A stretch of DNA of 64,000 nucleotides from Iphione sp. A-MEVVRFRX5 (lineage: Eukaryota), in the NCBI GenBank assembly GCA_976226885.1, contig OZ320313.1, forward strand, positions 248,001 through 312,000, written 5' to 3'. Within the stretch, counting starts at the first letter, position 1. Each line of letters starts with the position of its first letter. The position numbers and the translations under genes were made by a program. Shown here piece by piece: positions 6,300 to 18,679 of the stretch. The notes below the pieces were generated by a model. It did not search any database. It was not told where the DNA came from and saw only the letters and a list, made by a program, of their open reading frames with translations.

Positions 6300-9200
6300 G
6301 GAGGTGCCCAGAGGCATGGGCATTAGGACCCAGAAATGGGACAGATTCTGGCTTCTCCAGCTAAGAGTCGACCCGTATAGATCTCCTGGCCCGCAACACG
6401 ATGGTGCAATCCGTTTTGCTCTACAAGTCTCCGTTGCGGAGCTATAGGTGGTTTTGTGTGGTACCGCAATGTCTTCGGATCGCCACCAAACTCACCAGTC
6501 CGACCCTTGGGGGCCCTGCGGACATTCGGAGCGAGTTTGGAGGTGCCACAACCACCAGGAGAGACAAAAACGATGGTTTTGCCCATTTAATTTTCTCATC
6601 GGATCTATATAGATCTAGTGGCCCGCAACACGATGGTGTAACCCGTTTTGCTCTATGAACCTCCGTTGCGGAGCTATAGGTGGTTTTTTGGGCGAAACCG
6701 TAAGGTTCTGGGATCGCCACCAAACTCGCCAGTCCTACCCTCGGGGGCTCTAAGGACGTCCACAGCGAGTTTGGAGGCGCCACAACCACCAGATGTGACA
6801 AAAACAACGTTTTTGTCCAGTTTATTTTCTCTGCGGATCTGTATAGATCTTTTGGCCCGCAACACAATGGTGAAATCCGTTTGGCTCTACGAGCCTCCGT
6901 TGCGGAGCTATGGGTGGTTTTATGCTGAACCGTAAGTTTCTTGGATCACCACCAAACTCGCCAGTCCTACCCTCTGGGGTCCCACGGACGTTCGGAGCGA
7001 GTCAGGGGGTGCTACAACCACCAGGAGAGACAAAAACGATGGTTTTGTCCACTTAATTTTCTCATCGGATCTATATAGATCTCTTGGCCCGCAACACGAT
7101 GGTGAAATCCGCTTTGCTCTACGAGCTCTCGTTGCGGAGCTATGGGTGGTTTTATGCGGAACCGTAAGGTTCTCGGACCGCCACCAAACCCGCCAGCCCT
7201 GCCCTCGGGGGTTCTACGGACGTCCACAGTGAGTTTGGGGGCGCAACAACCACCAGATGTGACAAAAACGACGTTTTTGTCCAGCTCATTTTCTCTGCGG
7301 ATCTGTACAGATCTTTTGGCCCGCAACACTATGGTGAAATCCGTCTTGCTTTACGAGCCTCCGCTGCGGCGCTATAGATGGTTTTGTGCGGAACCGTAAG
7401 GTTCTCAGATCGCCACCAAACTCGCCAGTCCTACCCTTGGGGGCCCCGCGGGCATCCAGAGCGAGTTTGGGGGTGTCACAACCACCAAACACGGCAAAAA
7501 CGATGTTTTTGTCCAGTTCATTTTCTCAGCGGATCTGCATAGACCTGGTGGCCCGCAACACAGTGGTGAAATCCGTTGGGCTCTACGAGCCTCCGTTGCG
7601 GAGCTATAGGTGGTGTTGTGTGGAACCGTAAGGTTCTTGGATCGCCACCAAACTCGCCAGCCCTACCCTAGGGGGTTTTACGGACGCTCAGGGTGAGTTT
7701 GGAAGCGCCACAACCACCAGACGCGACAAAAACACCGGTTCTGGCCAGTTCACTTTTTCAGTGGATCTGTATACATCTCTTGGCCCGCAACAAGATGGTG
7801 AAACCCGTTCGGCTCTACGAGCTCTCGTTGCGGAGATACGGGTGGCTTTGTGCTGAACCGTAAGGTTCTCAAATCACCACCAAACCCACCAGTCCTACCC
7901 TCGGGGCCCCTGTGGACATCCTGAGCGAGTTTGGAGGTGCCACAGCCACCAGACAGGGCAAAAACGACGGTTTTGCCCAGTTCATTTTCTTAGCGGATTT
8001 ATATAGATCCTTTGGCCCGCAACACGATGGTAAAATCCGTTCGGCTCTACGAGCCTCTGTTGCGGAGCTATGGGTGGTTTTGTGTGGAACAGTAAAGTTA
8101 TTGGATCGACACCAAACTCGTCAGTCCTACCCTCGGGGGTCCTACGGACGCCCACAACGAGTTTGGAAGCGCCACACCCACCAGACGCGGCAAAAACACC
8201 GCTTTTGCCCAGTTCATATTCTCAGAGGATCTGTATAGATCTCTTGGCCCGCAACATGACGGTGAAACCCGTTTGGCTCTACGAGCCCCCGTTGCGGAGA
8301 TATGGGTGGCTTTGTGCTCAACCGAAAGGTCCTCGGACCACCACTAAACTCGCCAGTCCTACCCTTGGGGGTTCTGTGGACATCCGGAGCGAGTTTGGAG
8401 GTGCCACAGCCACCAGACAGGGCAAAAACGACGTCTTTGGCCAGTTCAATTTCTTTGGGATCTGGATAGATCTCTAGGCCCGCAACACGATGGTGAAAGC
8501 CGTTTGGCTCTACGAGCCTCCGTTGCGGAGCTACAGGTGGTTTTGTGCTGAACCGTAAGGTTCTCGGATCACCACCAAACTCGCCAGTCCTACCCTTGGG
8601 GGTCCTTTGGACGTCCGGAGCGAGTTCGGAGGTGCCACAGCCACCAAACATGACAAAAACGACATTCTCGTCCAGTTCATCTTCTTAGCGGATCTATATC
8701 GATCTCCTGGCCCGCAACACAACGGTGAAATCCGTTCGGCTCTGCGAGCTTTCGTTGCGGAGTTATGAGTGGTTTTGTGCTGAACCGTAAGGTTCTCGGA
8801 TCACCACCAAACTCACCAGCCCCACTCTCGAGGGCCCTGGGGACGTCTGCAGCGAGTTTGGAGGGGCCACAACCACCAGGAGTGGGAAAAATGATGCTTT
8901 TGTCCAGGAAAAACTTTCAGTGGATCTGTATAGATCTCCTGGCCCGCAATGCAACAGGGAAAACCGTTCCGCTCTACGAGTTTCCGTTGTGGAGCTACGG
9001 GTGGTTCTGTGCAGACATGCAATGTCGGCGGATCACCACCAAACTTGCCAGTCCTACTCTTGGGGGCTTGTCGGACACCCTGTGTGAGTTTGGAGGTTGC
9101 AGAACCACCGAGGGACGCAAAGACCCTGGTTTTGTCCCTCTAAATCTCTCGGTCAGCAAGGGGAAACTTTGAGGGTCCGGCCTCACTGTCGGAGCAATCC

Positions 9201-9975
9201 AAGAGGGACTTGCGATTGGCTGCGACATGTGAGCCGGGACGAAAGGGCCATCAAGGACCCCTCTGTACACGTCGAGATATACCCCGATGCATCGAAGACA
9301 GACCACCACCAAACTTGCCAGTCCTACCCTTCGGGGATTTACGGACACCCTGTCTGAGTTTGGAGGTGACATAACCACCAAAGGACACGAAAACGCTGTT
9401 TTCGTCCCTTTAAGTTCTCCAGTGGATCTGTACAGATCCCTCGGCCCGCAACGCCACGGTGAAAACCGTTTCGCTCTACGAGCCTCCGTTGCGGAGCTAT
9501 GGCTGGGTTTGTGCAGACATGCAATGCCTGGGGACCACCACCAAACTTGTCAGTCCTACCCTTGGGGACATTACGGACATTCTGTGTGAGTTTGGAGGTG
9601 GCAGAACCGCTGAGGGATGCAAAAACTCTGTTTCTTGTCCCTTTGACTTTTCAGTGGATCCGTATAGATCCTTTGGCCCGCAACGCAACGGTGAAAACCG
9701 TTTCGCTCTACGAGCTTCCGTTGCAGAGCTACGGGGGGTTTTGTACAGACATGCAATACCTGCGGATCCCCACCAAACTTGCCGGTCCTACCCTTGGGGG
9801 ACTTACGGACACCCAGGGCGAGTTTCGAGGTGGCAAAACCACCGAGGGACGAAAAAATTGCGGGTTTTGGTCCCTTAATCTCTGCAGTGGATCTGTATAG
9901 ATCCCTTGGCCCGCAGCGCAATGGTGAAAGCCGCTTCGCTCAACAAGCTCTCGTTGCGGAGGTCAGGCTGCCCTG
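6300..9975. repeat. 232-bp tandem satellite, about 16 units, inside the DIRS element
   Basis: GGCCCGCA motif at 6388, 6620, 6854, 7086, 7318, 7550, 7782, 8014, 8246, 8477, 8709, 8941, a replaced unit near 9180, then 9443, 9675, 9908. Confidence 0.95.
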
Positions 9976-10357
9976 TGCAGACATAAAAAGTCACCATAGG
10001 CAGTGGGTGCCACCAAGGGGCCTGTTCGGCCTCGGGTTTGCCCCACTAGTTTAGACGACCCCAGGCTCCAACTGCGCGCTGGGGGTGTGTCGCCAATGGA
10101 AGGACCCACATCAGGATCCAGTCAACTACTAGGAGGCACAATTCGCCAGTTGACTGCTGGCAGCACATACAGTGGAGACAATCCAAACGTCAAGACGCTT
10201 GAGGGCCTGAACCTGTTGCCAGGTGCCAGCACCCCTCCGGGGAGAAAGAGGGGGGGGTACAGGTAGCCGGCAGGGTTGCTGGAGAGGCACTGGAGAGGAC
10301 AAAATGGCCTACCACTGTGACAAAGTATAAGACCCATAAATCGGCTGACCAGGAACG

Positions 10358-11319: not shown

Positions 11320-11428
11320 TCTTCCCTTGGTATGACGTCACTGACCACGTGATTAATACTCTAATTAAACTAGTTTACGATGTTTGATTAGGATTAATCT
11401 AGTGGGAATAGTGACGTCATACTAAGGG
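11320..11428 (+). repeat. DIRS internal complementary region (ICR)
   Basis: The first part pairs with the left end. The second part (11357-11428) pairs with 11549-11620 with 2 mismatches. Together they spell the complement of the circle junction ...TTAGAG-TA-TTAATC... Confidence 0.9.
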
Positions 11429-11522: not shown

Positions 11523-11620
11523 AATGACTAGAAGCGCGCACGGCTCTTCCCTTAGTATGACGTCACTATTCCCACTAGATTAATCCTAATCAAACGTCAT
11601 AAACTAGTTTAATTAGAGTA
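11523..11620 (+). repeat. DIRS right ITR plus 3' extension
   Basis: Inverted match to the left ITR, followed by an extension that pairs with the ICR. Confidence 0.9.
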
Positions 11621-13048
11621 GAAATACTAAAAGTAAAGCCTACTGCAGAGTAACGTCTCTGACGAAAAATTTGTTTGTCTGGCAGGAACTTGTGTTCTCT
11701 CCTGCAATTCTTCATATCAGTGCTAAACATAACTGGACTTAAAACAGTGTAAAGCCATTGTATTTCATGTCGAGTCACTGTGTGAACAATGCAGATATTA
11801 TCAGTGATCCTTGACAAGACCCTAGATGCTGGGCGCTTGTGACGTCCTGATATCTAAGTCGTAATGACTCATTGTATCTTTGCCATGGATGTGTTGTCAC
11901 TATTGGTATATAATGAGAGCAGCCAGACACTCTCATCGGACTCGCCTTCCTGCTGCTGCTGAATTGCTGACTCACTGTACTAGTTGCTGACGAAGAATAA
12001 AAGGCTGATATTGAACCTGACGCTGTGGTGTTGGCTTTGTGCTACAGGTGAGGCTTCTTGATGGGAGGAGAAATCAGCTGAGAAGTAATCAGTGATTAGA
12101 CACTGATGCCCATCCTTAATTCTGTGAGAAGGATCTACTGAAATAGGGGCTTTATGGCTGTACAAATAAATTTACTGTTTTGAACAGGAGCTGTAAATAG
12201 GGGGTTAATTGTCTGGGAAATTACAGCAGATTTTGTAATCAATGTTAGCTTAGAGGAAAACCAAAGAACACCACATCAAAAAACATGCCGTTGTAATGTT
12301 TCTTTGTCTGATGAGTGCTGACAGTTAGCAGGCTTTAACCCCTTGCCGTCCGCGTCAAAAGACGTCATTCACATGCATCCAGAGCGGTTCATAGCTATTA
12401 TGTTTTAAATTCGTTCTGAATGAGGAAACGTATAAACTGAAGCTGCCATTAGATAAAAATTGTAATAGTCGTCATCCTAGTATATTTTTAAAGACTATTT
12501 TTAGAAATAAAAAATAGTATTTCTCCTTATGAAGGTGTAATGTATGTACGTAAAATTTGTTTTATCTTACGTCATTTCCGAAAAACATATGTTTTTGAGG
12601 TGAAATATTATTTGTACCGGCTAGACCTCTGGAGATGAATTAATAAGGAAGTCATAAGCATCAAAATGGTGAAAACAGAATAAAAATTGATTCATCCTAA
12701 ACTTACGTATGATCTTGAAAAGAGTAGTACGCTGTTGCCGTGACATAATGTAATGACGGTTACGCAGGATGTAAACAACTTTTATGACGTTGTTTTCCGG
12801 CTCTCTTCAAATAATACTTATATTGTGATAAAAGTTTTTCTAATCTGTACCAATGTCATTTAAATGACTAGGAATGGTAATATCTTGATTATTTTGAAAA
12901 AAAAATAAATATTTTGTCCGTTCATTAAATATGTACGTGACGTACATCCTGTGACAACACGTGCTGGTACGGAGCGGACAGCGAACATCGTTTACATTGT
13001 GAAATTGTAAAAATACGTGATCAAAGGCAGCACATCGACCATCAAAAC

Positions 13049-13738
13049 ATGCAGGCATTGGAAGAGGCATTTCGGAAGAAGGGGTAAGTGGTCAAATTAT
13101 ATGACATAAGGTTTTGTGTTTCTCAGTATTGCCTAGAAAATAATTTAGTCGAGGACCATGTGCTCTCCGCATTCAGCGCTACGTACAGTGCGGTCGGCTA
13201 GTGCCATGCATTACATATTTCTGCTATCCTTACTTGAGTATGAGCATTTTTTCCCAATTACTGGCAGTGTGAAGCAAATTGTAACTTATTAGTTGTGCCA
13301 TTTTTTGTAAATTTAGTTTAGAGATGCCTGATGGTCTCCGTCACCTGATAATGGAAGGGAGCAATAGGAAGTATGTGTACAAGCGGTTGTGGCAGGCTGT
13401 GAAGGTACGATGCTGACTTCTGCCTGTAATATTATGGCAACTACATTAGTTATGGATTAGAAACACATTCAATCCAATTATTACTGAACGAAGCCAAAAC
13501 CATGAGACAATTGAGATTGATTTTTATTCTTGAATGAAGATCGACATGTCAGAAAAGTGAAAGTGATATTCATATGATGTTCCAGTTTGGGGCCAAAATC
13601 GGATCAGGCTACAGAACATTTACCTTCCCTGAAGAGCTACGTCGTGCTGTGCGTGAACGGTTCCCAGACGAGCATGATCAGCACTATGATGAGCAGTACA
13701 GCCATAAACCAAGGGTTTGTATGCAATGTGCACGTTAA
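13049..13738 (+). CDS. Predicted 4-exon, 119-aa accessory gene inside the piggyBac, convergent with the transposase
   Basis: Exons 13049-13083, 13149-13237, 13322-13404, 13586-13738. GT..AG introns of 65, 84 and 181 nt with consistent phases 2,1,0. Protein: MQALEEAFRKKGRGPCALRIQRYVQCGRLVPCITYFCYPYLKMPDGLRHLIMEGSNRKYVYKRLWQAVKFGAKIGSGYRTFTFPEELRRAVRERFPDEHDQHYDEQYSHKPRVCMQCAR. Confidence 0.55.
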
Positions 13739-14062
13739 ATTTGTCACACTAATGTTAGCCACCTACATTATAGACGTACATGATAGCTAGTCTGTATGTA
13801 AGCACATATAATAATATTCAAGCTTCTAATTCTTACACTTCACAAGGATAATGATGCACTAGCTTCATAAGGGTAATTACTTACTAGCTTCATACGAATA
13901 ATTATTTACTAGCTTCATGAGCTAAGCAAACCGTTTCCTGATCTCCAGGTCTACCATGTAACCCTGGCTGAAGTCGCTGTCCTCCCTTACCCCAAGAGGA
14001 AGGATGCCTAGCTCAGCTTGAAATTGGCATGATCAGCCTCAAGGTTAGGACCTGCAAACAAA

Positions 14063-17000
14063 CTATTCATTGTTTAGTGCATAGAAGTGATCATAGTTGT
14101 CATGGCATCTGCTCATGCAGTTCCTCTCTCCTGTTAGACACAGGTAGACATCACACTCACGACACTTCCATTTGCCCTTCAACTCTTTCCTTTCTGTCAG
14201 GTAGCAGAGCCTGCAGTTCCTGCGGAAGGACGTGTGCTGAGGCATGTGCAGACCCGGTGACAAGTGGTAGGAGTGAGCCTGTGGTCTCCTGTTGTATGTT
14301 GGGATGTCCTCATCGTCCGTGATATTGGCCAGCTGACGGGCAAGCTCAACACGGAAACTCAGGTGTGAATATCCTAGCAGGAGATGACATAGTGTACATT
14401 AGTTGCATGTAATTGAATTTTCAATGTGATTTTCAGACTGAAGTAGATTGACTTACAAATTCAATGGCATAGAATTCCTACCCCTAGGCAGACAAAGAGA
14501 TCGGACTCTCTCAAAATCCAGTAATTCTATGTAGAAAAATTTAAGCTATTACCAGCCGGCCTCTTTAGTCCAGGGATTTCAGGATCTGCTGCCTGCCATT
14601 GCAGGAACAGCACAAAGCTGTTGTACACTGCTACATCGATGCAGTGAAACAGAAGGGTCTTCCACCAGCGGTGTGATTTCTGACGAACCTCGTAGTTGGC
14701 CAGTCTCTGGTCAGCTAAATCAACGCCTCCCATGTAGGCGTTATATTCATGGATGACCATCGGTTTTTTGACCATAATTGGCACATATTTGCCCTCCTTG
14801 TTTTTGGTAGCACGCTTTGCCATGATAAATGTATTGCCGCTGTGCAGGGTACTGGCCATAGACACCACCCTTGCATCTTTCCATTGTAGGAACAGGATGT
14901 CATCCTTCCGGACGAATCTCACATCACCTCTAGATGCCTTTTTCTCCCACTGTTTGTCACGTAGCTCCTATAATTATGCAAAAAAGACAGAGTTGTGGTG
15001 TGCAAATATACATTGGAAATGTATGCCATTTAAGAAATATTTCCACTGCATCGCAATTATCCAGGTTGAAACACTACCTATGCAAAAAGTTGCCTGAAAG
15101 TAATACGGCTGTGGGGTTTATTTTAAGGGTGTGAGACAGTTTTCAAGTGATGCAATTTCTATTCATTCATATGTTAGTGTTACTACTTTTCAAATTAACT
15201 TGTGCCTGCATACATTTTCTCGTATAAACATGAATACAAAAGGAAAAGATTCAAGAGATATGGCCCAAATTCTTCAGAGTTGAGTAGGAGTATCTTTGCT
15301 TTGCATGCCTGCAATGAGGATGACTAGCCACTCTATATATTGACCTCTCCATCTGACTGAATTCAACAAAATCTACCTGAGGGAATCCGCGACGCGTTCT
15401 CCAGGTGGTTCCACAAGCATATAATGACAGGTCACGCAGAGTCTTAAGAAGTTGTGCAGACGTGTAAAAGTTATCAAAGAAAATGTGATAGCTCTGTTCT
15501 CTGATAGACTGTACTAAATCCATGACAACGTCATAGGCAAGTCCGAATTTCCCAGGTCTCTGTCTGCGTCCAGTATAAATGCTTTGTAAAAAAGAGATTG
15601 TATTTTATGGTGTTACTCTCAATGTAAATATGTCTAACATAATTTCAATTCATGTGCAATGCATATCAATGCAATTTGAAATAGTAGCTATATAAGGGAG
15701 ACATTTCATGTTATATCACTCTTGTTTTTTGTATCAATAAAATTACTATAAAATCATATACTTACTCAAAGTCGATGTTGTATCCTGTTTGTGCCTCGCA
15801 CAGGCACCAAAGCTTAAAACCAAACCTCACCGGCTTATCAGGCATAAATTGCCTGATGCCGGATAGTCCTTTAGAACGGACCATCCGCTCATCGATTGAC
15901 ACGTTGCAATGAGGCTGGTACAGCACTTTACACATTTCCTTCAAATGGTTCACTAACGGTTTGATCTTTGCCAGCTTGTCAGTGCTGTCGTCCTTTCCTG
16001 GTTTTGAAACATGAATCATTCCCATCAGTGCTCGAAATCTGAAATAAAGCCATGCAATATGAAGTTAGTATACTAGCAAGGAACCAAATATCATTAGAGT
16101 GAACTTATTACAGTTAAATATATAGGTTTTTACAAATATGTCCCTCCTTACCGTGTCCTTGATAAGAACCTGCGAGCCCATCCACCATGGAAGAGTGTTG
16201 CTGTCGACCAGTAGTCATCTGCACATGGCATCCAAATAAAACCCATCATGATCAGAAGCCCAAGGAAATTGGACAACTCCTGCACAGTGACATTTTCCCA
16301 ACCTCCATCAAGTGACCTTGCATAGGATTTCTTTTCTTTTATATGCGCCCATCCGTACAAGTTAGTGTTGTAGCATATAAGCTGAAATCAAATTAAGAAA
16401 TTGATCATCAATAATCCAATACATTTTCCATATCTTGGTCCAATGAGCACAGTGCACTTGTTCTTGGGAGAAATGCATTATACATAAGCTACAAACTACA
16501 ACATTACATGACATATTCTAATATCCAAAATTACCTCTAAGATTCCACAAGTAAAGAAAAGTTTGAAAAAATCGATCGCTCTAGTGTAATTGGCAGCTTT
16601 CTGTCTGGAGATATGATCTTCCAAGTGTGGTCCAGGCACTCTCTTCGGCTTGAATCTGGGAACCGCAGGTTCAACATCATCACTCTCGTAACTCCTGAAA
16701 TGTTAAATACAGAACAACTGGTCACAAAAGAACTCATAAACGTCATGTTGGAACCAATTGTGCATATCTATAAACAGACAGTTACCCTACCTATGAATTA
16801 TGGTCTCCATGGCCAAACGGTTAACACGTTTGATTTTGAATTGTCAGATCCAGGTTCGAGTCCCACCCGGGTACACTTTTCACATCAGATGTATTACTTT
16901 TTTTGAGATTTAAAATGGAAATCAATGGTACAATACATTCATCAATTGTAAAGCAATGGGAACTACTAAAATTTACATCTAATAAGTGCAAGAAGACAAG

Positions 17001-17244
17001 ATACTTACTTGGTTGCAGTATTACGACTGTTGCCTCTTCTTCCACCAGGGGGACATGGTGAGGGGGTACTGCTCTCTTCTTCATCTGAGCTGCTCAAAAC
17101 ACGATTTAGGAGTTCCAAATCAAGTAGATCCTCTTCTTCATCGGAAAGACAATCGTATTCTTCATCAGAACTCTCACTTTCATTTAATCCCTGTGCCAAA
17201 AGCTCATTTGCTGCTACAGCAGCGGCCCGCACCGGTCTGGCCAT
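14063..17244 (-). CDS. piggyBac transposase, 7 exons, about 609 aa, apparently intact
   Basis: Exons 17244-17009, 16694-16535, 16381-16152, 16038-15766, 15581-15377, 14967-14553, 14373-14063. All introns are GT..AG with matching phases (2,0,2,2,0,1); total 1830 nt with no internal stop. Acidic N-terminus, IDFFKLFFT, SIDERM (D1), FDNFYTS (D2), GGVDLADQ (D3 region), and C-terminal Cys-rich domain CRLC..CRECDVYLC..C..CH. Confidence 0.93.
16802..16880 (+). pseudogene. tRNA-Gln(TTG)-like sequence (pseudogene or SINE head) in transposase intron 1
   Basis: GGTCTCCATGGCCAAACGGTTAACAC..TTTTGAA..GATCCAGGTTCGAGTCCC carries an A box, a B box, a TTG anticodon loop and a following TTTT. The anticodon and acceptor stems pair poorly. 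Confidence 0.55.
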
Positions 17245-18679
17245 GACGACTTCAACAGTGGCGGTTAACCATACCGGATGTGCTTCCCATAACATCATCG
17301 AATATTATAAAAAAAATTAATTCTTTTAATCAATAACAATGTATTTGCCTTTAAAAGACTCATTACTACCATCATACCAAAAATTATGGCAATCTGAAAA
17401 AAAACCTTCCTCCTACAGAGGTCGGAACTCATCGTACGGATCCGTACGATTTTACCATTGCTGGACGGTAAGGGGTTAAACAAAAGACAAAAATAAAGAA
17501 TCCGGTTCACTCCAAATACACAAATGTGTTGGGCATGGGTGATCTATCTCAAGAATGCAGTGAGAAAGTGTCTGTTTATTCAGAAAAACTGACTTCCTGT
17601 ATACCACGATTACATAACTATTGCTAAAAATAATGTGTCAAGTATTACCTCTTGATTTGATTAAATAATCAGAGGAAAAAATAACCTTCTATGATGCTGT
17701 TACTAATATTGCAAAACCTTCTATGCAGTGCAATTCGTGTTGAGTCCTTGGGTTACTTTAATGGCGATTGCCCCAAACAAAGTGCTCCCAAATTAAGTGC
17801 CAAGACACAGTTACCACACAGTTTACTGTTCACACCACAACGTTATCTCTATCTCTTTTTTATCAAAATACAACTGAAACACAATTCAGTCTGGTTTCGA
17901 AGTTTGGCTTTATTTCTGAGTGATGGATTTACATGTCCAGGGTGACAGCTACAACTGTGAGCAGACCAATGTTGATCATATGAGTTCAATCTCATATACA
18001 CTCAGCTTGATATGTCATGAAATCCCACTGTTAAACTTTGACGTGTTCAATTTCGAAGTTTCATCTCCAATCTAGTGACAAGAATGCTTTTAGAACCAAG
18101 ATTACTCATTTGTTACTGCAAACTACTCTGACATCTTTGAATTACTCTTTGCTTTCCCCCTTTCAAACAGATGGACTGTATTTCAGTATCTCCTCAGTTC
18201 CTTGTACTTGTCCTGCAAGATACAATATATCTTAATTAATCAGGCTCAACATGCTTATTTCTGAAACCCTTCCCTATTACTGTGTGTTATATCCATTGTC
18301 TCGTATATCTGTAAACAATACCAATAGCACAAGATCCCAAAACTATACAACATTCTATATTAGTTTATTCAGAGTACGACATTACTGTGTTGCACTTAAT
18401 GATATTATATACAGTTCTATTTGAGAGCCAATGCAGATTAGTGGATTTTGGATGTCATGATCCATCTTAGCTACATGTACTTGTATGGTTGGGCTTTTAG
18501 GGACATTGTAACAGTTTTACAGTAAACAGTAAACATGCTGATTAATTTTTAAAAAATGGTGCAAGACATTGGTGGCAAGGCTGCTACAGTGTAATAGTTC
18601 CATACTTTGTATTGTTCAACACAGTGTTAGATTTGGGAAGCAGCCGCGGTTGGGTGCTTGCTGACTTTAATCTTGGTTT

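What the first reader, a model, noticed from the sequence alone, without database searches (positions are those of the whole stretch)
13049..13738. Hidden second spliced gene inside the piggyBac: a possible two-gene transposon system
The apparently non-coding 1.7-kb end of the element yields a 119-aa protein from four small exons whose three intron phases all agree; none of it appears in the ORF track. It is convergent with the transposase (stops 325 nt apart). The pattern PCIT..NRKYVY..W..FG.KIGSGYR..FP..R..VRERFPD..QHY loosely recalls the P2X7-ballast-like / Kolobok second-ORF motif (CIT..NR.YR.AYR..W..G.LG...R...P.C....IR..FP...Y). That resemblance is from memory only. A partner gene could regulate transposition or targeting.
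Basis: partly seen in the sequence, partly recalled or inferred. Interest (0 to 1): 0.88.

Follow-up and report, generated by a model that had tools for sequence, protein, structure and literature searches.

The report
Probable second gene in a piggyBac
An apparently complete piggyBac jumping gene carries, tail-to-tail with its transposase, what looks by composition and codon usage like a small spliced second gene, but the proposed kinship of its protein with the P2X7 'ballast'/KolX family failed most sequence tests and was marginal in the rest.

Summary
Four + strand pieces (13049-13083, 13149-13237, 13322-13404, 13586-13738) have GT/AG borders and give one 119-codon frame inside a 5,137-bp piggyBac (12339-17475).

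Agreeing intron phases are no evidence: 99% of composition-matched random sequences yield an equally long stitched frame.

Other measures support a real gene:
- Proposed exons are 48-51% GC and introns 29-34%, a contrast never reached by 300 chance models and matching the transposase's own exons and introns.
- GC-only segmentation recovers exon 4 within 4 nt.
- Codon usage resembles the transposase's (0 of 5,000 stop-free random frames score as high).
- Exon 2 (the 'PCIT' exon) carries no coding signal, and the 3' end is ambiguous.

KolX/P2X7-ballast kinship is not supported. Pfam P2RX7_C matches published controls of equal size but not this product. There is no N-terminal cysteine block. On a Kolobok KolX profile it scores 6.2 bits, against 53.1 and 11.0 for the two published piggyBac KolX-like proteins, and inside window noise.

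Kojima & Bao (2022) already reported a few piggyBac families with a KolX-like second protein. No RNA runs or related copies could be obtained. The scan holds six unchecked sister notes on other DNA of this genome.

The parts
12335..12338 (.). TTAA target-site duplication, left
   Evidence: Read directly. It is matched by a TTAA at 17476-17479.
12339..12351 (+). Left terminal inverted repeat CCCCTTGCCGTCC
   Evidence: Inverted repeat I5. It matches the right end at 12 of 13 positions.
12936..13048 (+). GC-rich stretch directly upstream of the ATG; possible 5' UTR of the small gene (inferred)
   Evidence: The GC-only two-state segmentation calls 12936-13209 as GC-rich. An in-frame TGA lies at 12938-12940.
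13049..13083 (+). Small gene, exon 1 (coding part): ATG plus 11 codons and 2 nt, donor GTAAGT
   Evidence: GC 0.51. Codon test z=1.9. The blind gene finder recovers the donor at 13083.
13149..13237 (+). Small gene, proposed exon 2 ('PCIT' exon); the least secure exon
   Evidence: GT/AG borders and GC 0.51. It has no codon-usage signal: z=0.8, 662 of 3000 random frames as high. The blind finder skips it. Skipping it through an AG at 13315-16 keeps exon 3 in the same frame.
13322..13404 (+). Small gene, exon 3
   Evidence: GC 0.51. GC-only segmentation gives an island at 13326-13426. Codon test z=1.6. The blind finder recovers the donor at 13404.
13586..13738 (+). Small gene, exon 4 with stop TAA; the best-supported coding piece
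   Evidence: GC-only segmentation gives an island at 13582-13734, within 4 nt of both ends. Codon test z=2.7, 5 of 3000 random frames as high. The blind finder keeps it at every intron penalty.
13913..14011 (+). Possible alternative last exon of the small gene, reached from a GT at 13715; alternatively the transposase 3' UTR
   Evidence: Proposed by the blind finder at intron penalties of 6 and 10. Codon test z=1.7. It lies within the GC-rich segment 13912-14062. Not resolved.
13859..13930 (.). Three direct repeats of about 25 nt (core TAGCTTCAT at 13860, 13885, 13910) in the gap between the two stop codons
   Evidence: Function unknown. No AATAAA or ATTAAA on either strand in 13600-14200.
14063..17298 (-). 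piggyBac transposase gene of about seven exons. The start ATG is at 17298 or 17244 and the stop TAG at 14065-14063. Best in-frame GT/AG borders give approximate exons ..-17009, 16694-16535, 16381-16152, 16038-15766, 15581-15332, 14967-14553 and 14373-14063.
   Evidence: Stop-free stretches. Pfam DDE_Tnp_1_7 profile positions 15-349 are covered in order by four exons, E 1.8e-8 to 3.2e-23. Splice-site search; junctions 4/5 and 5/6 are the least certain.
17463..17475 (-). Right terminal inverted repeat
17476..17479 (.). TTAA target-site duplication, right

Best explanation
The element at 12339-17475 is a structurally complete piggyBac. It carries two convergent genes that would be transcribed by RNA polymerase II: a roughly seven-exon DDE transposase on the minus strand, and a small intron-containing gene on the plus strand in its 1.7-kb left arm.

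The small gene is most likely real. Exons 1, 3 and 4 are secure. Exon 2 and the exact 3' end are not. As modelled, the product is about 14 kDa, basic (pI 9.6) and arginine-rich, with six Cys and four His.

Its family is unresolved. It is not a recognisable member of the KolX/P2X7-ballast family. At most it keeps a vestige of that family's last 40 or so residues.

Inferred mechanism (not shown): the protein is an accessory factor of the transposon, as in other two-gene DNA transposons. A small basic protein of this kind would bind the element's DNA or the transposase and so help or restrain transposition. The two genes end 324 nt apart with no canonical poly(A) hexamer between them. Their transcripts may therefore overlap tail-to-tail, which would couple their expression or feed small-RNA silencing.
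For: Element: TTAA duplications, CCC...GGG inverted repeats and an ordered DDE_Tnp_1_7 match.

Gene reality:
- All four proposed exons are 48-51% GC and all three introns 29-34%. The transposase shows the same pattern (exons 40-50%, gaps 25-35%).
- The GC contrast of 0.176 exceeds all 300 chance-stitched models (mean 0.017, maximum 0.097). The longest alternative stitched frames on either strand of the real sequence lack it (+0.067, -0.069).
- A GC-only segmentation, blind to frames and splice sites, returns 13582-13734 and 13326-13426.
- A codon model trained on transposase cores, corrected for composition and for being stop-free, gives +3.1 bits against -35.8 +/- 11.3 (0 of 5000). This lies inside the leave-one-out range of true transposase exons (-0.20 to +0.14 bits per codon). 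Only 0.9% of other long stop-free stretches in the window do as well.
- The plus strand beats the minus strand at every setting of a blind gene finder, which recovers three of the six splice sites exactly.
- Splice-site style and intron sizes resemble the transposase's.

Precedent: a few piggyBac families encode a second protein (PMC9587614).
Against: - No transcript evidence: no RNA run was listed.
- No other copy or relative could be fetched, so frame conservation is untested.
- The exhaustive protein search with exon 4 found no relative among 1.84 billion representatives; the only two hits were repetitive artefacts.
- Exon 2 has no codon signal.
- After allowing for about 55 stop-free stretches in the arm, exon 4's codon signal taken alone is only marginal (my estimate).
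- On a GC-driven score, 24 of 64 other tiles of the window do as well.
- The proposed function is analogy only.
Confidence: 0.62

Rival explanations
1. One reading: the small protein is a member of the KolX/P2X7 cytoplasmic-ballast family (Pfam P2RX7_C). It would belong with the second proteins of piggyBac-2_GrCh and piggyBac-14_PI, very diverged and having lost the zinc cysteines.
For: - Published precedent that a few piggyBac families carry a C-terminal KolX-like protein lacking most of the seven cysteines.
- On a 3-sequence C-terminal profile the product was the top hit of the whole window, at 8.4 bits, and rank 3 of 2000 shuffles.
- On the 5-sequence profile only 4 of 2000 shuffles beat it.
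- It matches 6 of 11 literature-defined conserved positions. These include the equivalents of R546 and R578, the only GDP contacts conserved beyond deuterostomes, with the exact spacing P-x7-R-x2-F-P.
- Six unchecked sister notes in this genome report the same motif, mostly in longer genes.
Against: - Pfam P2RX7_C gives nothing for the exons or for the 58-aa junction-spanning segment. Equal-sized controls give 58.3 and 25.9 bits.
- With a better, Kolobok-only profile the score fell to 6.2 bits, below unrelated window peptides (10.2 and 7.4). piggyBac-2_GrCh, left out of that profile, scored 53.1 bits and piggyBac-14_PI 11.0.
- The N-terminal block profile gives -5.2 bits, and no upstream exon helps.
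- The position test gives only P=0.043, and 6 of 737 unrelated peptides do as well.
- Pairwise tests: one of three comparators at P=0.004, the others not significant.
- P2X7 itself was never retrieved from PDB sequences.
- Cysteine motifs arise by chance here, for example WQCEANC inside intron 2.
Confidence: 0.2
2. There is no gene. The frame is a chance stitching across GC-richer patches of the transposon's long left arm. Those patches exist for a non-coding reason, such as transposase-binding or regulatory sequence, or the relic of an old insertion.
For: - Stitched frames of this length are nearly universal in random sequence.
- No transcripts, relatives or family match.
- Exon 2 has no coding signal.
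- Overlapping frames in the same islands are also open: the +1 frame of exon 4, and two minus-strand frames of exon 3.
Against: - The exon/intron GC contrast is 5 standard deviations beyond chance-stitched models.
- The island edges coincide with the acceptor and the stop codon of exon 4 to within 4 nt.
- Composition- and stop-corrected codon usage is matched by 0 of 5000 random frames and lies within the range of true transposase exons.
- Of the six frames of the joined exons, only the proposed one scores positive.
Confidence: 0.25
3. It is a decaying relic of a once-functional accessory gene, KolX-like or other. The gene would still be visible in composition but no longer under selection in this family.
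For: - Weak residual C-terminal motif without the cysteines.
- Exon 2 lacks codon signal.
- There is no canonical poly(A) signal.
- Most sister notes describe longer genes of about 1.1 kb, against 0.69 kb here (unchecked).
Against: - The frame is intact across all four pieces, with canonical splice sites.
- The element otherwise looks young and complete: near-perfect inverted repeats, intact duplications and an open transposase.
- In a young copy an intact frame says little either way.
Confidence: 0.1

Closest known systems
Second proteins of piggyBac-2_GrCh and piggyBac-14_PI (Kojima & Bao 2022, Mob DNA 13:24, Data S6)
   Same: A second, small protein encoded inside a piggyBac beside the transposase.
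   Different: Those two proteins are recognisable by profile. piggyBac-2_GrCh gets 25.9 bits on Pfam P2RX7_C and 53.1 bits on a Kolobok-only profile, and piggyBac-14_PI gets 11.0 bits. This product gets no Pfam hit and 6.2 bits. Both published proteins keep the P-x-C cysteine; this one has P-E-E. The gene here has three introns and faces the transposase. I could not check the published families' gene structure or orientation. Their hosts, going by my reading of the Repbase abbreviations (from memory), are not animals.
KolX of Kol0-lineage Kolobok transposons, the P2X7 cytoplasmic ballast and zebrafish Nanor (Pfam PF20478 P2RX7_C; 'ZCD' of Rump et al. 2020)
   Same: Kolobok Kol0 elements also target TTAA and carry two genes, a transposase plus a small accessory protein of unknown function. 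The motif-level likeness covers the last 40 or so residues: R-x3-Y, G-x-G-x-R and P-x7-R-x2-F-P.
   Different: The defining zinc-cysteine motif (WCxCxxC, CC, CIT, PSC) is absent. The Pfam and local profiles do not recognise the product.
Other two-gene cut-and-paste transposons, such as PIF/Harbinger (transposase plus Myb-like DNA-binding protein), MuDR and En/Spm (textbook knowledge, not tested here)
   Same: An autonomous DNA transposon that carries a small second gene whose product assists or regulates transposition. This is the working analogy for the mechanism.
   Different: No Myb/SANT or other known DNA-binding domain was detected in any exon. No functional data exist. piggyBac transposases are generally sufficient on their own.

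Membership tests
KolX / P2X7 ballast (Pfam PF20478 P2RX7_C) | Sequence match to the P2RX7_C profile at or above the curated cut-off of 23.5 bits | tested here: not met
   Exons 2, 3 and 4, the 54-aa ORF and the 58-aa exon-3/4 junction segment all returned 0 families at E<=10. Equal-sized controls scored 58.3 bits (Kolobok-1_SKow) and 25.9 bits (piggyBac-2_GrCh). The whole 119-aa product could not be submitted because no reference exists for a spliced product.
KolX / P2X7 ballast (Pfam PF20478 P2RX7_C) | N-terminal zinc-coordinating cysteine block (WCxCxxC ... CC ... CIT) | tested here: not met
   A 4-sequence profile of this block gives the product -5.2 bits, rank 1887 of 1922. The best of 32 possible upstream exons gives -0.4 bits, against a null median of 0.1.
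KolX / P2X7 ballast (Pfam PF20478 P2RX7_C) | Conserved non-cysteine positions of the C-terminal block: R546, A549, Y550, Y/F553, W, I/V568, P570, C572, R578, F/Y581-P582 (Rump et al. 2020) | tested here: inconclusive
   6 of 11 positions match, giving P=0.043 against 20000 shuffles. 6 of 737 unrelated six-frame peptides do as well.
KolX / P2X7 ballast (Pfam PF20478 P2RX7_C) | C-terminal block score comparable with accepted members on a family profile, filters off | tested here: not met
   On the Kolobok-only 5-sequence profile, piggyBac-2_GrCh scores 53.1 bits, piggyBac-14_PI 11.0 bits and this product 6.2 bits. Window noise reaches 10.2 bits.
KolX / P2X7 ballast (Pfam PF20478 P2RX7_C) | Ballast fold with a dinuclear zinc site and a guanine-nucleotide site | not testable with these tools
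The spliced product has neither, so no model was made.
piggyBac superfamily (the element) | TTAA target-site duplication and short terminal inverted repeats beginning CCC and ending GGG | tested here: met
   TTAA at 12335-38 and 17476-79. The 13-nt repeats agree at 12 of 13 positions.
piggyBac superfamily (the element) | DDE_Tnp_1_7 (PF13843) transposase, open after splicing | tested here: met
   Profile positions 15-349 are matched in order by four minus-strand exons, E 1.8e-8 to 3.2e-23. In-frame GT/AG junctions were found for all six introns. The C-terminal cysteine-rich tail is seen by eye but gave no Pfam hit.
Two-gene autonomous DNA transposon with an accessory protein | Second gene lies inside the terminal repeats and is intact | tested here: met
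   The gene lies at 13049-13738, inside 12339-17475, with an open frame and canonical splice sites.
Two-gene autonomous DNA transposon with an accessory protein | Second gene is transcribed and spliced as modelled | not testable with these tools
   The look-up of sequencing runs listed no RNA run, so read laying could not be used.
Two-gene autonomous DNA transposon with an accessory protein | Second gene is conserved under purifying selection among family copies and co-occurs with the transposase | not testable with these tools
   There is only one copy in the window. No relatives were found in the protein, metagenome or viral collections. Sister copies noted by the scan cannot be read from here.

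The most novel reading that the evidence does not exclude
This piggyBac family, which the scan's unchecked notes suggest has several copies in this genome, carries an accessory gene for a small basic protein with no recognisable relatives. The protein would be either an orphan or a KolX remnant reduced to one short motif. It would be needed for, or would regulate, transposition. That would make this a genuine two-component piggyBac system, possibly with tail-to-tail transcript overlap as a built-in control.
Probability: 0.3. Interest if true: 0.65.

Novelty: new variant of a known kind. Interest (0 to 1): 0.42.

Why it matters
piggyBac is regarded as a one-gene transposon and is widely used as a gene-delivery tool. 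An accessory protein that helps or restrains a natural piggyBac would be of practical and evolutionary interest. It would also bear on how the KolX/ballast module moved between TTAA-targeting transposons and the P2X7 receptor.

The idea is not new, however. Kojima & Bao (2022) already reported a few piggyBac families with a KolX-like second protein. For this copy the family link was not confirmed. What remains is a probably real small gene of unknown family, supported by composition statistics on a single copy only.

Tried and rejected
- Pfam on single exons gave nothing.
- PDB sequence search with exons 2, 3 and 4 gave only chance zinc-finger, RING and Zn2Cys6-like hits at E 0.3-3, and never P2X7.
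- ESM Atlas with exon 4 gave nothing useful.
- The exhaustive HMMER search with exon 4 returned only two internally repetitive proteins whose scores come from summed repeats; rejected as artefacts.
- An exact look-up of the 54-aa ORF found it not on record.
- RNA runs: the tool was busy at first, then listed none, so read laying went unused.
- The transposase exon in the protein collection, and exon 4 or the transposase exon in metagenome and viral contigs, found no relatives.
- An attempt to import KolX fragments by searching with a published 51-aa segment found no candidates.
- A search of our own findings by sequence was blank.
- No HMM library is present on the script machine.
- A 'CCRD' upstream exon and the 'WQCEANC' motif in intron 2 were considered as the missing cysteine block and rejected by systematic scoring.
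- The GC-driven gene-finder score was rejected as non-specific, because 24 of 64 other tiles score as high.
- Rfam and ARAGORN on the element found nothing.
- McCarthy et al. 2019 is not held; Rump et al. 2020 was used for the residue roles instead.
- Pfam, homology search and structure prediction with the whole 119-aa product were left out.

Full report
**The element**

Inverted-repeat search finds TTAA+CCCCTTGCCGTCC at 12335-12351 and its complement ending at 17479 (read directly; 12 of 13 repeat positions agree). Between these ends, the minus strand carries a piggyBac transposase in about seven exons.
- Four stop-free stretches match Pfam DDE_Tnp_1_7 in order over profile positions 15-349, with E from 1.8e-8 to 3.2e-23.
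- In-frame GT/AG junctions exist for all six introns. Donors are mostly GTAAG or GTAAT, acceptors mostly TTTCAG, and introns run 113-364 nt.
- The transposase stop is TAG at 14065-14063.

The element is therefore a structurally complete 5,137-bp piggyBac. Its 1.7-kb left arm (12339-14062) is unexplained by the transposase. Only one copy lies in the window.

**The observation**

They read as a single 119-codon frame from the ATG at 13049 to the TAA at 13736-13738. An in-frame TGA lies upstream, so this ATG is the first in frame. The gene is convergent with the transposase, with 324 nt between the two stops.

**Is it more than chance?**

That argument has no weight. A dynamic-programming search for the longest ATG-to-stop frame with up to three GT..AG introns finds 360 nt or more in 99% of composition-matched random sequences. 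It still does so in 80% when GTA..YAG is required. The real arm itself offers longer alternatives, 546 nt on the plus strand and 468 nt on the minus strand.

1. Composition.
   - The four exons are 48-51% GC and the three introns 29-34%, with no overlap. This mirrors the transposase, whose exons are 40-50% and whose inter-exon gaps are 25-35%.
   - The contrast of 0.176 compares with 0.017 +/- 0.030 (maximum 0.097) for the best stitched models of 300 shuffles.
   - The longer alternative models in the real sequence show +0.067 and -0.069.
2. Blind segmentation. A two-state GC-only segmentation, which knows nothing of frames or splice sites, returns 13582-13734 (exon 4 is 13586-13738) and 13326-13426 (exon 3 is 13322-13404). 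It also returns 12936-13209, which merges a GC-rich leader, exon 1, intron 1 and most of exon 2.
3. Codon usage.
   - A codon table trained on 414 Pfam-supported transposase codons was scored against each sequence's own base composition, renormalised over sense codons.
   - The proposed frame scores +3.1 bits, against -35.8 +/- 11.3 for stop-free random frames (0 of 5000 as high).
   - Transposase exons in leave-one-out give -0.20 to +0.14 bits per codon. The small gene gives +0.026. The two longer alternative models give -0.18 and -0.33.
   - Only 0.9% of the 680 other long stop-free stretches in the window do as well.
   - With an earlier, uncorrected version of the score, the proposed frame was the only one of six to score positive.

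**Limits of that evidence**

- Per exon, the codon signal sits in exon 4 (z=2.7), exon 1 (z=1.9) and exon 3 (z=1.6). Exon 2, which carries 'PCIT', has none (z=0.8).
- A minimal gene finder trained only on the transposase always prefers the plus strand and always keeps exon 4. At a low intron penalty it recovers donors 13083 and 13404 and acceptor 13586 exactly.
- That finder skips exon 2. An AG at 13315-16 keeps exon 3 in the same frame when exon 2 is skipped.
- It also proposes a further exon at 13913-14011, reached from a GT at 13715. This extra exon is about as coding-like as exon 3 (z=1.7). It could equally be the transposase 3' UTR.
- The finder's raw score is driven by GC and is not specific: 24 of 64 other tiles of the window score as high.
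- Allowing for the roughly 55 stop-free stretches in the arm, exon 4's codon signal alone would be only marginal.
- Neither strand has an AATAAA or ATTAAA between the genes.

I conclude that a plus-strand coding gene involving exons 1, 3 and 4 is probable, at about 0.6-0.7. The exact exon chain is unsettled.

**External evidence**

None could be obtained.
- No RNA run was listed.
- The exact 54-aa ORF is not on record.
- The exhaustive HMMER search with exon 4 against 1.84 billion representatives returned only two repetitive artefacts.
- Neither exon 4 nor a transposase exon has relatives in the word-indexed protein collection, metagenome contigs or viral contigs.
- The scan's own notes list six other places in this genome where first readers flagged a convergent spliced 'KolX/ballast-like' gene in a piggyBac. 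Most are about 1.1 kb long, and none has been followed up.
- Those notes come from the same kind of reader and cannot be read from here, so they are a lead and not support.

**What is the protein?**

Kojima & Bao (2022, PMC9587614) showed that KolX, the second protein of Kol0-lineage Kolobok transposons, has the P2X7 cytoplasmic-ballast fold. [quoted passage not shown] Their Data S6 gives two such proteins, piggyBac-2_GrCh_2p and piggyBac-14_PI_2p. The concept of a KolX-bearing piggyBac is therefore already published.

I tested membership in several ways, using short segments copied from that paper as controls.
- **Pfam.** P2RX7_C (PF20478, cut-off 23.5 bits) matches a 51-aa Kolobok KolX C-terminal segment at 58.3 bits and the equivalent piggyBac-2_GrCh segment at 25.9 bits. 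It returns nothing for our exons, the 54-aa ORF, or the equivalent 58-aa segment spanning the exon 3/4 junction.
- **Pairwise alignment.** Smith-Waterman scores beat shuffles for one comparator of three (8 of 2000), and unrelated window peptides score about the same.
- **Small C-terminal profile.** A 3-sequence profile with filters off gives the product 8.4 bits. That is the best score in the window and rank 3 of 2000 shuffles, but unrelated peptides reach 8.1.
- **Broader profile.** With a Kolobok-only 5-sequence profile the score falls to 6.2 bits, below unrelated peptides at 10.2 and 7.4. None of those peptides is P2RX7_C by Pfam. piggyBac-2_GrCh, left out of the profile, scores 53.1 bits and the degenerate piggyBac-14_PI scores 11.0. 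A true relative's score should rise with a better profile, not fall.
- **N-terminal block.** A profile of the WCxCxxC...CC...CIT block gives -5.2 bits, worse than nearly all shuffles. No possible upstream exon joined to exon 2 improves on noise.
- **Conserved positions.** Of the eleven non-zinc positions that Rump et al. (2020, PMC7016195) list as conserved, the product matches six. These include the equivalents of R546 and R578 with exact P-x7-R-x2-F-P spacing. This gives only P=0.043.
- **Chance motifs.** Chance cysteine motifs are easy to find here, for example WQCEANC inside intron 2 and RCCRD upstream.

Membership in the KolX/ballast family is therefore not shown. On the defining features that could be tested, it is not met. 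A vestigial relationship confined to the last 40 or so residues cannot be excluded; I give it about 0.2.

**The product and the likely mechanism**

As modelled, the protein is 14.3 kDa with pI 9.6. It has 15 arginines, cysteines at 16, 26, 32, 37, 114 and 117, and four histidines.

By analogy with other two-gene cut-and-paste transposons (Kolobok Kol0 with KolX; PIF/Harbinger with its Myb-like protein; textbook knowledge), the most likely role is an accessory factor. It would bind the element's DNA or the transposase and so promote or limit transposition. The tail-to-tail arrangement has a 324-nt gap, no canonical poly(A) hexamer and three 25-nt direct repeats. This makes overlapping antisense 3' ends plausible. 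All of this is inference and none of it is shown.

**Verdict**

- The 'second gene' reading is probably right for exons 1, 3 and 4, though on single-copy statistics only.
- The P2X7/KolX identification is not supported.
- The general idea is already in the literature.

This is a new variant of a known kind, of moderate interest. Its value depends on transcript data and on comparison with the sister copies in this genome.

Noticed in passing
window 13859-13930: Three direct repeats of about 25 nt (core TAGCTTCAT at 13860, 13885, 13910) lie in the gap between the two convergent stop codons. The core occurs nowhere else in the window on either strand.
   Followed up: partly
window 13912-14062: A GC-rich segment abuts the transposase stop. 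It could be the transposase 3' UTR, or an alternative last exon of the small gene (13913-14011, codon test z=1.7).
   Followed up: partly
window 13600-14200: There is no AATAAA or ATTAAA on either strand in or around the 324-nt gap, so neither convergent gene has a canonical poly(A) hexamer there.
   Followed up: no
window 11352-11428 and 11549-11625: A 77-nt inverted repeat, 95% complementary with arms 120 nt apart, lies about 0.7 kb upstream of the piggyBac. It falls within the stretch another note calls a DIRS shell.
   Followed up: no
window 7900-10100: There are many overlapping, mutually similar ORFs on both strands (recurring peptide strings such as 'PPNSLRTS' and 'RVGLASLVV').
   Followed up: no
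window 12200-17800: Another scan note says a piggyBac family of this genome carries an antisense tRNA-like cassette in intron 1. ARAGORN found no tRNA-like gene in this copy over 12000-17800, and Rfam found no credible RNA family over 12200-17600.
   Followed up: partly
window 13244-13318 (intron 2, + frame): The string WQCEANC resembles the KolX WCxCxxC motif but lies in an intron and in the wrong order. It is a worked example of how easily such motifs arise by chance in this sequence.
   Followed up: yes
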